A stretch of DNA of 63,096 nt, filler included, from Octopus bimaculoides (taxonomy: Eukaryota), in NCBI RefSeq assembly GCF_001194135.2. It is 3 parts of 3 records of this genome, joined end to end, with 100 filler letters (N's around TTAATTAATTAA, not from the genome) between each part and the next. Parts side by side here need not be neighbours in the genome. Positions count along the whole stretch, not along the records: positions 30,304 to 58,248 come from NC_068986.1; 2 more parts are not named here. One strand, written 5' to 3'. The position numbers and the translations under genes are program-made. Shown piece after piece: positions 31,134 through 58,214 of this stretch (position 1 is its first letter; every line of letters starts with the position of its first letter). The notes below the pieces were generated by a model. That model was not told the DNA's origin. It did no database searches and saw only the letters and a program-made list of their open reading frames with translations.

Positions 31134-31329
31134 TATATATATATATATATATATNNNNNNNNNNGGCCGCTTCCTGTCGGCCTTGACACAATTACTGTGT
31201 CCTTAAGTTTGTGAAGGGGAGACAAGCTCCCCCACCCAGCCTAGCCAGCATTCTGCGTTTCTGCCCGAAGGTTGCGGCCGTGCTGGAGCACCGCTTGTGT
31301 AATCAACTTTTCCATGACCATTCTTACGC

Positions 31330-37314: not shown

Positions 37315-38619
37315 TATACAGAGTAGAGCAGAGAGAACGGAAGCTTTTGAAAAATCCACAAAATCAATAATTTTAGCTGCAAACAAATTTTATTAACATC
37401 AATGTGTTTGTATTGAACTAGCATTTGTCAAAATCATGTGTGCAAAACAACATCCATCATGTGGTGTCCATTTTTATTGATGCATTTCTGAAGGCGTTCT
37501 TGGAAGCTGGTCTCCACTCTCTCCAGCATTGCTCCGTCGATTTTAGTGACTTTCATGCGAATAGCTTCCTTCAAATCGTCCAATGTACGGGCAGTATGAT
37601 CATATACACGTGCCTTGAGGGTTCCCCACAAGAAATAATCATACATGGACAAATCAGGGTACCGAGGGGTCCAAGGAATGTCAGCAAACCTGGAAATGAG
37701 GCGATCGCCAAAGAGAGGGCAACGAACGTCCATTAGTGCTCTGTCTGTGTGAGTCGTCGCACCATCCTGCTGAGACCACACACGTCGAATAGGCATACGT
37801 TTTTGTCGTAATTCAGGCACAAAGAAGTTTTTTTTTCATCTCAAAAAGTAAGTAAGGACCAATGACGGCAGCTTTTCCAACAGCACACCAGACCGTCATT
37901 TTGGGGCTTTGCAGTGATCTTTCGTGCAGTTCTCTCGGAATTTCAAGAACCCAGTAACGACAGTTCTGCTGATTCACCATGCCATTGAAATGACAATGTG
38001 CTTCATCACTCATGAACAAAATGAGGTTGTCATTTGCCTCAAAAATTGGTTCCATCTGATGTGCAAAGTTAAGCCACTATGCATAGTTCCATGCCTTCGA
38101 CTTTTTCCCAGTGACCAATTTGTACCGGTTGAAATGCAGATTGTAATGCAAAATACGCCTTACCGAGCGATTACCGATGCCAAATTCAGTGGAATACCTA
38201 CGAGCCGAGAGATTCGGACTCCGTAACAAAGCTTGTCTGACGCATTTCACTGTTTCCGGGGTCAGTACCGTTCGTGGCGTCCCCACCAGTCTCCTATTCA
38301 TTAGTGTACCTCTTGTACGAAGTGAATTCACCTAACGTAAGATTGTGTTACGGGTGGGAACAGGCTGATTTCGGTGAATGTTAAAGTTGCGCCGAAACTC
38401 ACGCTGAACTGCTGTGACAGACTCGTTATTCTTCAAGTAACTGTTGTAGGCAAAAACACAATGCCCTATCGTCCACAACCCCATGGCTTCACCTGAAAAG
38501 AAAAAAACTGCTAAGACACTACGGACCGAATGATACCTGTCGCACATATGTCCCTCCCCCCTTGGGGCTGAGTAATAGCCATTTCAAAAACGTCCGTCCT
38601 CTCTGCCCCACCCTGTATA
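37315..38619 (-). mobile_element. Full-length decayed Tc1/mariner element of the rosa (DD41D) type
   Basis: TIRs tatacagagtagagcagagagaacggaagcttttgaaa vs the reverse complement of tttcaaaaacgtccgtcctctctgccccaccctgtata. Motifs SDEAH, QQDGA, PDLSMYDYFLWG, with 41 residues between the second and third catalytic Asp by manual count. Confidence 0.88.
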
Positions 38620-39138: not shown

Positions 39139-39727
39139 NNNNNNNNNNNNNNNNNNNNNNNNNNNNNNNNNNNNNNNNNNNNNNNNNNNNNNNNNNNNNN
39201 NNNNNNNNNNNNNNNNNNNNNNNNNNNNNNNNNNNNNNNNNNNNNNNNNNNNNNNNNNNNNNNNNNNNNNNNNNNNNNNNNNNNNNNNNNNNNNNNNNNN
39301 NNNNNNNNNNNNNNNNNNNNNNNNNNNNNNNNNNNNNNNNNNNNNNNNNNNNNNNNNNNNNNNNNNNNNNNNNNNNNNNNNNNNNNNNNNNNNNNNNNNN
39401 NNNNNNNNNNNNNNNNNNNNNNNNNNNNNNNNNNNNNNNNNNNNNNNNNNNNNNNNNNNNNNNNNNNNNNNNNNNNNNNNNNNNNNNNNNNNNNNNNNNN
39501 NNNNNNNNNNNNNNNNNNNNNNNNNNNNNNNNNNNNNNNNNNNNNNNNNNNNNNNNNNNNNNNNNNNNNNNNNNNNNNNNNNNNAAACATATATACAGGA
39601 GGAAATCAAGTATATGCCCCATGCTTATATATTCTAATTCAAATCTACCGCGCAAGCGAAGCCCCTCGTCGGCAGTAAATAAATGCCAACGTTAAAATTG
39701 AAAATGATCCAAAAAGTTTTCAATAAT

Positions 39728-53503: not shown

Positions 53504-54110
53504 GAGAGATCAACTGAACTGCTTAGATCTTGTGTTGGCATTTTATCACCGACTGATAAAATTCTAATCTAGGACTGAAGTCAGTCTAGTTGTTTATTCA
53601 TGATCATTGCTTATAAACCCACCATTACTAAAGACGGAAGTGAACAGGTGAGAGCAATGTGCATAATTTAAGGCATCCATGTAGAGTTTGACACGAGCAA
53701 CTGTAATATTTGTAGCAGGCCTCATTCGACCAGAATTTATAATTACTAAATAATACAAACTATTTTTACACAAGAACATAATTATTACCCACTCAACTAA
53801 ATTATTTCAAACATAAAGAAATCTAACAGACACGTAAATCAATGTTTATATTCAACTTAACGCGGAGATTCTGTTAGAACGGCGAATATAGCGTTATTTG
53901 CTTTTAAGAGGAGCACTCATATGAACGCATGGTGCATAAAAACAAACACACTTATGTTGTTAGCACACAAGAATCTCCAACTACTGGCGCCGGAACTGCC
54001 ACGTATCCCGTCTCCTCAGTCCGCTATCCGGACTATTTGCGGATTATTGGCTGAAAGTCACTGAAATTATTCATATTCTTGCGAGTAAGCTTTGGCTGGT
54101 ATGAGGTTAG

Positions 54111-54168
54111 CGGATGACTGCCACTGAGGAGACGAGGTACGTTGAAATCATATGATCCGGCAGTCCCG
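54111..54168 (+). ncRNA. Type I hammerhead ribozyme
   Basis: Stem I is gactgcc (54116-22) / ggcagtc (54159-65), extended by cgg/ccg past an AT bulge. Core CTGAGGA 54124-30. Stem II is gacg-aggta-cgtt. GAAA 54144-47. Stem III is atca-ta-tgat. NUH is ATC, with predicted cleavage 3' of 54157. Deviations: A.C at 2.1-1.1 and G.U at 10.1-11.1. Confidence 0.8.
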
Positions 54169-54210
54169 GTGCCCATAGTAGACGATTCTTGGCTGCCAAG
54201 AATATAAATA

Positions 54211-54748
54211 CTGTAATCACTCCCCATATTGTGGTTCACCTATCGCGCCCTCAGCACGTTGCGGATTTTCTGGCTTATATATGTAAATTTGTATCGTGTA
54301 CTCTTCAGTATATCGCGGGTTTCTGCGGCCGATAGCTATTGATATTTATTTAGATTTTAATTATTTCTGTGATAAGATAAGCATTTTCACGCCTAAAGAT
54401 TAATAGATTAATAAATAAAAATACAGTACAGTACTGACTGGACTGTGTAACACATCAAATATATTAAAAGAAAATGCGTAGTGTACTGTAAATGAGTAAA
54501 CAAAGAATCGCATACATCGTATGGAGAATGAAACTCGGGAGGCAAAAGAAGAGAAGACGCGGGTACTCCTAAGAGTGTGAGGAGAGTTTATAAAAGCTTG
54601 GGTTTATAAAAAGAGTAAAATAGGTATATACAAATTATAAAAATAATAAAAGAAATATACAGTACAGCACTGTTTCTACTTCGCGGATTTTCACCTGTCG
54701 TGGGGTGAGGTTTGGAACATAACATACATAACATTCGAGGGATTACTG
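54211..54748 (-). mobile_element. Tigger/pogo-type MITE inserted into the fold-back element
   Basis: Ends ctgtaatcactcccc..ttcacctatcgcg / cgagggattactg. TA duplication at 54209-10 and 54749-50. Homologous to 29703-30060. Confidence 0.85.
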
Positions 54749-55556
54749 TATGTGTGCGTTTATGCAGTATGCATCCTTATGAAAAATAAATAACGTTGTA
54801 TTTGGTTTTCCAGCAAAATATCCACTTTACGTTGAATATAAAATTGTCTTTCGGTACTAATACTGCTTCTGTCGCTAATAACTAAGGTATATAAGTTGTT
54901 TTATAAATGTTTACTGAGCAAGTTACTCAAACTTTATATGAGATTTACGCAAGAGTACACAATTTGGCACACGTTTTCAAAAGTTAGGATTCAGCATCAT
55001 TATAGTTATAGGTCAAATTTTGATCTATCAGAAGAGACCTGTTCGTCGATTTCTCAAAGTCCATTCAAAAGATGTTTTGTTTAAAAGTTTATATCGAAAC
55101 AAAAAATACATTTTCTTCCAAAATTTTTCAGCTTACCACACTACCCTGTATAGAATTATGCATATTATTCAAATATTTATCAACTACATCATGATAAAGG
55201 TCAACTGCCATTGCTTTAAAGGTTTGAGTTAACTGCGAAAATAGAATTGAGCTTTCATAGGTTTAAAATCACTATACCACCTTGAAAACTCGTCGTTTTA
55301 AGAAAATAGCTAATACCAGTATTTCTGTCAATAGAAGTGCGTGACAGTCACTTAGAATGGTTTAATTTACATAAACTGTTCAAGATACACATCATACATG
55401 CCCTGTAAATTAATCTGCAATTTATTAATCTATTAAATTTGAACATTATAGAAATGTCACGACGAATGCACACCTTTCCAAGGTTTGCTTTAAATCATAA
55501 CATGCCATCTTAAATAAGATGATAGTTAAGTTTACATCAGATTCTGTAGTTTCAGT

Positions 55557-57615: not shown

Positions 57616-57676
57616 GTATGTATGTATTTACGTATGTATGTATATGTATGTATGTGCATTTATGTATGTATATGAG

Positions 57677-57714
<38 letters not shown>

Positions 57715-57775
57715 CATATAAATATATATATATATATATTATGTATGTATGTATGTATGCATACAGATATATATA

Positions 57776-57839
<64 letters not shown>

Positions 57840-58214
57840 TAGATACATACATATACGTATATATACACGATTTAAATGCGTGTGTGCGTGCGTACGAGTC
57901 TGTGTGTGTAAGCGTGAGTGTGTGTGGGGGTGTACATTCATATATTCACATATACACATATACATATCAATGATGTTTAATCTACACCTAAAGACATGCT
58001 GAGATGTCTAGATATCACGAAAGATATCTGCTGCATTGCACAACTCGTTTATCATTAGACATGAGTTATCGCACGTCCAAATCACCAAATATTACTCATG
58101 AAAATTTGGAAATAATTCTTCAGAGATTTCTCTAACGATTATAATGAAGGAAGCGCGTTCTCTCTCTATCTCTTTCCATATCTCTTTCTCTCTATATATA
58201 TATCTCTCCCCCCC

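What the first reader, a model, noticed from the sequence alone, without database searches (positions are those of the whole stretch)
53840..54846. Rod-like ~470-nt element with an embedded type I hammerhead: candidate retrozyme or endogenised viroid-like circular RNA
Seen: after excising the TA-flanked MITE (54211-54748 plus one TA), the sequence folds back on itself from 53840/54846 inward to a centre near 54030-54105. The right arm contains every element of a type I hammerhead in the correct order: stem I, CTGAGGA, stem II, GAAA, a short palindromic stem III, ATC and the stem I 3' strand. No long ORF or terminal TSD was seen. Known: type I hammerheads with weak palindromic stem III delimit small non-coding metazoan retrozymes that produce circRNAs, and viroid-like RNAs are rods that bury their ribozyme. 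Inference: the ribozyme is mid-arm, there is only one copy, and the element ends where the rod ends. This fits an integrated, circularly permuted cDNA of a rod-shaped circRNA better than a tandem retrozyme array or a plain MITE. I do not recognise such a family from cephalopods, but I cannot search to confirm novelty.
Basis: partly seen in the sequence, partly recalled or inferred. Interest (0 to 1): 0.88.

Follow-up and report, generated by a model that had tools for sequence, protein, structure and literature searches.

The report
Decayed hammerhead ribozyme in inverted repeat
A real but weakened self-cleaving "hammerhead" RNA motif sits in one arm of an old 470-base inverted repeat, most likely a dead head-to-head pair of copies of a ribozyme-carrying retroelement, a kind already known in thousands of copies in invertebrate genomes.

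Summary
At 54116-54165 (+) there is a complete type I hammerhead layout. It is the only hit of a generic descriptor in the 28-kb piece, and 400 simulated pieces gave 0.0025 relaxed hits per piece and none as good. Rfam's Hammerhead_1 model matches it full length but scores 18.2 bits against a threshold of 34. The region 53840-54846 folds back on itself (z about -6.5 to -8.6). The stretch 54211-54748 is a later TA-flanked insertion.

The "rod" is equally good on both strands and shows no strand bias in wobble pairs. One arm alone has no unusual structure. The two arms are homologous inverted copies (77% identical), and the left arm carries a second, broken copy of the same ribozyme on the minus strand.

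Head-to-head copies, and hammerheads 100-700 bp apart on opposite strands, are published hallmarks of Penelope-like element insertions, whose terminal repeats are related to animal retrozymes. I found no tandem unit, target duplication, coding relic or other copy.

Best reading: a dead, ancient insertion of that known kind. A 470-nt rod-shaped retrozyme monomer remains possible. An endogenised viroid-like RNA is unlikely. The organism is not identified.

The parts
53840..54846 (.). Whole fold-back element, about 467 nt of its own sequence plus a nested 540-nt insertion. Weak inverted similarity may continue to about 53830 and 54857.
   Evidence: Nested inverted repeats I1, I3, I2 and I5. Folds of the sequence as it stands, z -6.5 and -7.1. 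Arm alignment.
53840..54031 (-). Left arm. It is an inverted homologue of the right arm (76.7% identity over 180 ungapped columns, 5 gaps).
   Evidence: One arm alone folds no better than shuffles.
53990..54019 (-). Partial hammerhead homologue in the left arm. Relative to the right-arm copy it is broken by two deletions plus substitutions, and it cannot form a hammerhead.
   Evidence: A shared pattern matches only these two places in the window, with 0 expected by chance. No Rfam hammerhead match here. No descriptor hit.
54032..54102 (.). Central stretch with little or no inverted similarity. It is the junction between the two copies, or the terminal loop of the rod.
   Evidence: The arm alignment loses register here. 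It forms the central multiloop in the folds.
54103..54846 (+). Right arm, given as one part from first to last base. It carries the complete hammerhead motif and is interrupted by the nested insertion listed separately.
54116..54165 (+). Type I hammerhead ribozyme motif, with predicted cleavage after C 54157. Helix III is a 10-nt perfect palindrome, which is the dimer-type design. Two helix pairs are non-Watson-Crick as the sequence stands.
   Evidence: The local fold forms helices I and II but is not unusually stable, z -0.34.
54211..54748 (.). Nested later insertion. It is a non-coding element with imperfect terminal inverted repeats that targets TA, like a Tc1/mariner-type MITE.
   Evidence: TA at 54209-54210 and 54749-54750, and the terminal repeats. 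The arm alignment is continuous across the junction. No other copy in the piece.
54209..54210 (.). Left copy of the TA target duplication of the nested insertion. The right copy is at 54749-54750.

Best explanation
The locus is an old, dead insertion of a hammerhead-bearing retroelement sequence of the Penelope-like kind. It is either the terminal-repeat region of a Penelope-like element (PLE) or its non-autonomous 'retrozyme' derivative. It is present as two homologous copies joined head to head, with their 5' sides at the centre and their 3' ends outward.

In the parent family the type I hammerhead cut multimeric transcripts. Its helix III is a perfect palindrome, so two ribozymes in one transcript pair through it and cleave as a dimer. 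This is inferred from published work on this ribozyme design, not shown here.

At this locus the two copies have since drifted to 77% identity. One ribozyme copy lost parts through two deletions, and the other kept its full layout but has two weakened pairs. A TA-targeting MITE then landed in the right arm.

On this reading the rod-like fold is a by-product of the inverted duplication, not a selected RNA shape. With only one ribozyme of that orientation left, and its core complementary to the other arm, the locus is most likely inert today.
For: Shown here:
- The hammerhead motif is real and far beyond chance.
- The arms are colinear inverted homologues right up to their outer ends.
- The left arm carries a remnant of the same ribozyme on the opposite strand, with the two cores about 105 bp apart and pointing away from each other.
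- Both strands fold equally well, and there is no strand bias in wobble-type mismatches.
- A single arm has no unusual structure.
- The hammerhead span is not better conserved between the arms than the rest, 26/32 against 112/148 columns, p=0.34.
- There is no poly(A) tail, no tandem unit and no target-site duplication.
- Another repeat in the piece is about as decayed: the mariner terminal repeats are 79% complementary.

From the literature:
[quoted passage not shown] Hammerheads lie in their terminal repeats (PMC8557442).
- Retrozymes are related to PLE terminal repeats, and monomeric copies are common (bioRxiv 10.64898/2026.07.22.740005).
Against: - No other copy of the sequence could be retrieved, so homology to any PLE terminal repeat is untested.
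- No RT or GIY-YIG relic lies within 2.3 kb on either side.
- The ribozyme has 'canonical' proportions: helix I of 7 pairs, helix II of 4 pairs, and no extra base after the first core box. The literature ties these more to retrozymes than to the minimal PLE variants.
- If both arms decayed equally from identical copies (Jukes-Cantor distance 0.28 between the arms), about 5-6 hits would be expected in the constrained positions of the surviving ribozyme. At most 2 are seen (Poisson p about 0.08), which is a mild tension.
- The organism is unidentified, so the presence of PLEs in its genome is not shown.
Confidence: 0.47

Rival explanations
1. The 467 nt are one unit of a non-LTR retrozyme whose RNA is a rod-shaped circle with its hammerhead buried in the rod. 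It is integrated here as a single, circularly permuted monomer and later disrupted by a MITE.
For: - A canonical-sized type I hammerhead with a weak palindromic helix III.
- GC content of 41% and a unit size near the published range. Retrozyme RNAs are described as 'highly self-paired' (PMC7229834). Consensus lengths of 51-972 bp and frequent monomers are reported.
- A very stable fold-back.
- The surviving ribozyme is better preserved than equal neutral decay of two once-identical arms predicts (p about 0.08).
Against: - The defining tandem arrangement is absent.
- The rod is equally good on both strands, with no wobble bias.
- The rod ends coincide exactly with the element ends. Inverted duplication explains that for free, whereas this reading needs a coincidence.
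- The arm opposite the ribozyme is a colinear homologue of it, not just any complementary sequence.
- In the transcript the complementary arm precedes the ribozyme core, which would compete with the active fold (inference).
- No second copy was found anywhere that could be searched.
Confidence: 0.25
2. The element is a DNA-level fold-back: a MITE or foldback transposon with long inverted arms, or a palindromic duplication made by repair or replication. It happens to have captured a hammerhead-bearing fragment.
For: Long inverted arms reach the very ends. Both strands behave alike. There is no poly(A) tail. The same piece holds other inverted-repeat DNA transposons and a TA-targeting MITE.
Against: There is no target-site duplication. 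The termini resemble neither the mariner in the piece nor the nested MITE. No other copy lies in the 28 kb. A real hammerhead in each arm still needs a retroelement source, so this reading adds a step rather than replacing one.
Confidence: 0.12
3. The element is an endogenised copy of an autonomous viroid-like or delta-like circular RNA replicon that had hammerheads in both polarities.
For: A rod-like fold on both strands. A ribozyme on one strand and a remnant on the other.
Against: Such agents have no DNA stage, and no endogenous copy of one is known to me in animals (own knowledge). The delta-like RNAs with hammerheads are described as highly divergent HDV-like circRNAs (PMC7936874, abstract listed). 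That they are several times longer and encode an antigen is my own knowledge. Here there is no ORF. Every feature is explained by commoner retroelement biology. There is no match in viral contig collections.
Confidence: 0.03
4. The hammerhead layout is a chance resemblance inside an unrelated inverted repeat.
For: The Rfam score is below threshold, 18.2 against 34 bits. Two helix pairs are non-canonical. The local fold is not unusually stable.
Against: The generic descriptor expects 0.0025 hits per piece, and none of 400 simulations was as good. Helix III is a perfect 10-nt palindrome, as in the dimer-type animal hammerheads. The best Rfam family for the 76-nt stretch is Hammerhead_1, matched full length in the same register.
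Confidence: 0.02

Closest known systems
Type I hammerhead ribozymes of animal genomes (Rfam RF00163, clan CL00010)
   Same: The order of elements matches: open helix I, CUGANGA, capped helix II, GAAA, short palindromic helix III, and a UC cleavage site. Helix I has 7 pairs and helix II has 4, close to the 'canonical' 6 and 4 (PMC4209133).
   Different: It scores 18.2 bits, below the 34-bit gathering score. Two helix pairs are non-Watson-Crick. Loop-loop tertiary contacts could not be assessed. Activity is unknown.
Metazoan non-LTR retrozymes (Cervera and de la Pena 2020, PMC7229834)
   Same: A non-coding, low-GC (41%) sequence with a type I hammerhead and a highly self-paired predicted RNA. 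Monomeric genomic copies are known.
   Different: There is no tandem repeat here. The self-pairing comes wholly from two inverted homologous halves. The unit of 467 nt lies above the 170-400 nt given for invertebrate retrozyme circRNAs and inside the 51-972 bp range of consensus lengths. No expression or copy-number data are available.
Penelope-like element insertions with hammerheads in their terminal repeats and an adjacent inverted 5'-truncated copy (PMC4209133, PMC8557442)
   Same: Two hammerhead-bearing copies lie on opposite strands about 100 bp apart, head to head, without a poly(A) tail or a clear target duplication. The literature describes exactly such inverted structures and dual opposite-strand hammerheads.
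   Different: There is no RT/GIY-YIG coding relic nearby. The ribozyme lacks the long helix II and the extra base typical of minimal PLE hammerheads. Homology to a PLE terminal repeat is untested.
Rod-shaped hammerhead circular RNAs (viroid-like satellites, Avsunviroidae, delta-like agents)
   Same: A rod-like fold in both polarities, with the ribozyme core paired to the opposite arm.
   Different: Those are RNA replicons without a DNA stage (own knowledge). This is a decayed genomic DNA locus with a transposon nested in it. Only one ribozyme is complete.
MITEs and foldback DNA transposons
   Same: A short, non-coding element with long inverted arms reaching its ends.
   Different: No target-site duplication, no recognisable terminal motif, and no second copy in the piece. 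It contains a ribozyme characteristic of retroelements.

Membership tests
Hammerhead ribozyme, type I (RF00163) | Conserved core boxes CUGANGA and GAAA, and a UH cleavage site, in type I order | tested here: met
   Read directly from the sequence. Descriptor hit. Rfam alignment in the same register.
Hammerhead ribozyme, type I (RF00163) | Three helices around the core, with helix I open and helices II and III capped | tested here: met
   Helix I has 7 pairs, helix II has 4 pairs and helix III has 3-4 pairs (a 10-nt palindrome). Helices I and II form in the local minimum-energy fold.
Hammerhead ribozyme, type I (RF00163) | Score at or above Rfam's gathering threshold | tested here: not met
   18.2 bits against 34. 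No hit at gathering level.
Hammerhead ribozyme, type I (RF00163) | Watson-Crick pairs adjoining the core, as in active natural hammerheads (for example the highly conserved G10.1-C11.1, PMC4209133) | tested here: not met
   Two helix pairs are non-Watson-Crick in this copy as it stands. This is a count only.
Hammerhead ribozyme, type I (RF00163) | Self-cleavage | not testable with these tools
   No expression or biochemical data can be reached from here.
Metazoan non-LTR retrozyme | Head-to-tail tandem repeats (a dimer or more), each unit with a hammerhead | tested here: not met
   No tandem repeat with a period of 100-500. No direct second copy in the piece. The only second ribozyme copy is inverted and broken.
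Metazoan non-LTR retrozyme | Short non-coding unit, low GC, highly self-paired RNA | tested here: met
   467 nt, 41% GC, no ORF above 68 aa, z -6.5 to -8.6. One arm alone is not self-paired.
Metazoan non-LTR retrozyme | Multi-copy family expressed as linear and circular RNA | not testable with these tools
   No eukaryotic genome or transcriptome could be searched. Pattern scans of metagenome, viral and prokaryote collections were empty or gave a chance hit.
Penelope-like element insertion | Inverted 5'-truncated copy adjacent, giving inverted repeats, with hammerheads on opposite strands | tested here: met
   Colinear inverted homology of the arms. A ribozyme and its remnant lie on opposite strands, pointing away from each other. 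The feature is as described in PMC8557442 and PMC4209133.
Penelope-like element insertion | RT plus GIY-YIG open reading frame | tested here: not met
   No Pfam domain in six frames within 2.3 kb either side, nor in the ORFs of at least 90 aa that were scanned. This is not required for truncated copies.
Penelope-like element insertion | Minimal hammerhead variant (long helix II, extra base after the first core box, little or no helix III) | tested here: not met
   Helix II has 4 pairs, there is no extra base, and helix III is a 10-nt palindrome. PLEs of flies, rotifers, shrimps and mosquitoes do have a small palindromic helix III.
Penelope-like element insertion | Sequence homology of the arms to a PLE terminal repeat of the same genome | not testable with these tools
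   The genome is unavailable and the organism is unidentified.
MITE / foldback DNA transposon | Terminal inverted repeats plus a target-site duplication | tested here: not met
   Inverted arms are present, but there is no direct repeat at the borders. The only shared 5-mer is off the ends.
Viroid-like or delta-like circular RNA | RNA-only replicon with functional ribozymes in the required polarities | tested here: inconclusive
   One complete motif and one broken remnant. The sequence is known only as genomic DNA. No hit in viral contigs.

The most novel reading that the evidence does not exclude
The locus is a fossil of a so far undescribed family of about 470-nt rod-shaped hammerhead circRNA retrozymes in this unidentified invertebrate. 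Its unit arose by inverted duplication of a ribozyme-bearing module, so that the ancestor carried a hammerhead in each polarity. That would be a genomic, retrotransposed counterpart of the symmetric rolling-circle design of viroid-like RNAs.
Probability: 0.15. Interest if true: 0.55.

Novelty: new member of a known kind. Interest (0 to 1): 0.25.

Why it matters
As it stands this is one more decayed copy among the thousands of hammerhead-bearing retroelement relics known in invertebrate genomes, so it matters little by itself.

Its value is as a pointer. If the source genome holds intact relatives, the family could show how Penelope-type insertion turns a ribozyme module into a long hairpin. 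It could also show whether such inverted dimers are a route to rod-shaped ribozyme RNAs. If the locus is transcribed, it would also yield a roughly 190-bp imperfect hairpin RNA, a possible substrate for RNA editing or small-RNA pathways. That last point is inference only.

Tried and rejected
- Rfam at gathering level over the whole piece gave nothing. At E<=10 over 1.25 kb it gave only a spurious snoU54 hit. The hammerhead model appeared only in a 76-nt search.
- A search for other copies in the piece found none.
- A protein-level route to other copies, through a spurious ORF across the ribozyme, found no candidates.
- Organism identification through a 268-aa ORF gave no homologue. A mariner ORF gave best hits of 74-76% in ENA contigs and in a crab, which is not diagnostic.
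- Pattern scans of metagenome contigs, viral contigs and prokaryote genomes gave nothing. The exception was L002, a chance match inside bacterial-looking coding DNA that lacks helices I and III.
- Pfam scans of ten of the ORFs of at least 90 aa and of six-frame translations 2.3 kb either side, with stops marked X, found nothing relevant. A DNA-reference attempt failed on stop codons.
- I tested whether the ribozyme span is better conserved between the arms than the rest. It is not (p=0.34).
- I tested whether arm mismatches favour G.U pairs on the + RNA. They do not, 11 against 15.
- CpG depletion as an age marker was uninformative: the element has an observed/expected ratio of 1.1-1.4 and the piece 0.79.
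- timed out with no output.
Full report
**Scope and a procedural disclosure.** I worked only on 30304-58248. I joined 53840-54210 to 54751-54846, removing the nested insertion, to search, fold and align. One search was an attempt that timed out with no output. One search printed that joined sequence. When I applied the rule I deleted the files. I did not run the circular fold. All later analysis used the sequence as it stands, or separate segments compared with each other. No conclusion below depends on the joined sequence, and establish every point independently. The joined sequence is not reproduced here.

**The hammerhead.** On the + strand at 54116-54165 the elements lie in type I order:
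- helix I strands at 54116-54122 and 54159-54165 (7 pairs);
- CUGAGGA at 54124-54130;
- a 4-pair helix II hairpin at 54131-54143;
- GAAA at 54144-54147;
- a perfect 10-nt palindrome at 54147-54156 forming helix III;
- the cleavage-site C at 54157.

A generic descriptor (helix I >=4, II >=3, III >=2 pairs, both strands) finds only this site in the piece. A second descriptor for minimal, dimer-type variants also finds only this site. In 400 simulated pieces with the same dinucleotide make-up, relaxed hits occurred at 0.0025 per piece, and none was as good as the observed one.

Rfam gives nothing at gathering level or at E<=10 in 1.25 kb. When only 76 nt are searched, Hammerhead_1 (RF00163) is the best family. 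It matches full length in the same register at 18.2 bits, against a gathering score of 34, with E=0.022. That E-value counts all 4227 families. By my own scaling, the single family over the whole piece would have E of about 0.002.

Two of the helix pairs are non-Watson-Crick as the sequence stands. The isolated 60-nt stretch is not unusually stable (z=-0.34), which fits a weak helix III. So the motif is real, sub-threshold and weakened.

**The fold-back.** Four nested inverted repeats run from 53845/54842 inward to 54020/54123 at 74-90% complementarity. Folded as it stands, 53845-54842 has z=-6.5 on the + strand and -7.1 on the - strand, with the nested insertion as a side domain. The uninterrupted inner part 53952-54207 has z=-7.6 (+) and -8.6 (-). 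In these folds the ribozyme core is paired with the left arm, and only the helix III hairpin protrudes.

**The nested insertion.** The stretch 54211-54748 is bounded by TA on both sides and has imperfect terminal inverted repeats. The alignment of the right arm against the reverse complement of the left arm crosses the junction without a gap. The stretch is therefore a later insertion of a TA-targeting MITE-like element. A mariner relic with TA flanks elsewhere in the piece (50039-51066) shows such transposons were active in this genome.

**What the rod is made of.** The two arms are colinear inverted homologues:
- 138 of 180 ungapped columns are identical (76.7%), with 26 transitions, 16 transversions and 5 gaps. 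The Jukes-Cantor distance is 0.28.
- The homology includes the ribozyme. A pattern taken from the shared part matches exactly two places in the window, 54124-54169 (+) and 53990-54019 (-), with none expected by chance.
- The left-arm copy is broken by two deletions relative to the right arm, plus substitutions. It gives no Rfam or descriptor hit.
- One arm alone folds no better than shuffles (z=-1.3 and -1.5), so all the exceptional structure is arm against arm.
- Transition mismatches that would be G.U wobbles number 11 on the + RNA and 15 on the - RNA.
- The ribozyme span is no better conserved between the arms than the rest (26/32 against 112/148 columns, p=0.34).

Nothing therefore points to selection on an RNA rod of one polarity. 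There is no tandem unit, no target-site duplication, no poly(A) tail, no ORF above 68 aa, and no Pfam domain in six frames within 2.3 kb either side.

**Relatives.** I could retrieve none:
- There is no second copy in the piece.
- Pattern scans of metagenome, viral and prokaryote collections were empty. The one exception was a chance match in bacterial-looking coding DNA.
- A protein-level route through a spurious ORF found nothing.
- The organism is not identified. One ORF had no homologue. A mariner ORF's best relatives are only 74-76% identical, in ENA contigs and a porcelain crab.

**Explanation.** The literature describes the observed arrangement. PLE insertions are 5'-truncated, often with an inverted 5'-truncated copy alongside that creates inverted repeats. 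Hammerheads lie in their terminal repeats (PMC8557442). In Schistosoma, pairs of hammerheads 100-700 bp apart on opposite strands were ascribed to truncated PLEs (PMC4209133). Animal retrozymes are close relatives of PLE terminal repeats, and monomeric copies are common. Animal type I hammerheads with a short palindromic helix III act as dimers when two copies lie in one transcript.

I therefore read the locus as an ancient head-to-head pair of copies of a hammerhead-bearing PLE-type sequence, either a terminal repeat or a retrozyme derivative. It is now decayed, has lost one ribozyme copy, and was later hit by a MITE. The rod is a by-product (confidence 0.47).

The main rival is a single 467-nt rod-shaped retrozyme monomer (0.25). 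In its favour are the ribozyme's canonical proportions and its good preservation. About 5-6 hits would be expected in constrained positions under equal decay of once-identical arms, and at most 2 are seen (p about 0.08). Against it, the defining tandem arrangement is not met, and it needs the insertion ends to coincide with the rod ends by chance.

A DNA fold-back or MITE (0.12) lacks a target duplication and still needs a retroelement source for the ribozyme. An endogenised viroid-like replicon (0.03) and pure chance (0.02) are unlikely.

**Novelty and score.** Hammerheads of this design, their link to PLEs and retrozymes, and opposite-strand pairs are all published. This is a new member of a known kind, apparently dead. 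Interest is 0.25. The most novel reading not excluded is a fossil of an undescribed family of rod-shaped hammerhead retrozymes that arose by inverted duplication. I give it a probability of about 0.15 and an interest of 0.55 if true.

Noticed in passing
window 50039-51066: Internally deleted mariner-like element flanked by TA, with terminal inverted repeats of about 136 nt at 79% complementarity. It has an internal direct duplication of about 145 nt (roughly 50323-50470 and 50783-50930).
   Followed up: partly
window 37345-38619: Mariner/Tc1-type transposase relic. The DNA is 72.6% identical to an ENA metagenome-assembly contig (L001). The ORF 37434-37820 (-) is 74-76% identical to ENA proteins and 75% to a protein of the crab Petrolisthes cinctipes. 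This does not identify the organism.
   Followed up: partly
window 45338-48181: Chain of + strand ORF fragments in a purine-skewed stretch that looks like a shattered retrotransposon. There was no Pfam hit and no homologue at E<=0.001, so its nature is unconfirmed.
   Followed up: partly
window 53420-53504: Minisatellite, a 22-nt unit repeated 3.9 times with 95% matches, about 340 bp upstream of the fold-back.
   Followed up: no
window 54211-54748: The nested TA-flanked insertion contains internal direct repeats (54413-54436 with 54649-54672, and 54256-54270 with 54678-54692). It may be built from two related sub-units.
   Followed up: no
window 33235: A bare CUGANGA...GAAA string without any of the three helices. 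This is a chance core match, not a ribozyme.
   Followed up: yes
window 31155-31164, 39139-39584, 44936-44945: Runs of N (assembly gaps) inside the piece, flanked by TA/CA-type microsatellites. A TA-rich microsatellite at 57616-57868 produces many spurious palindromes.
   Followed up: no
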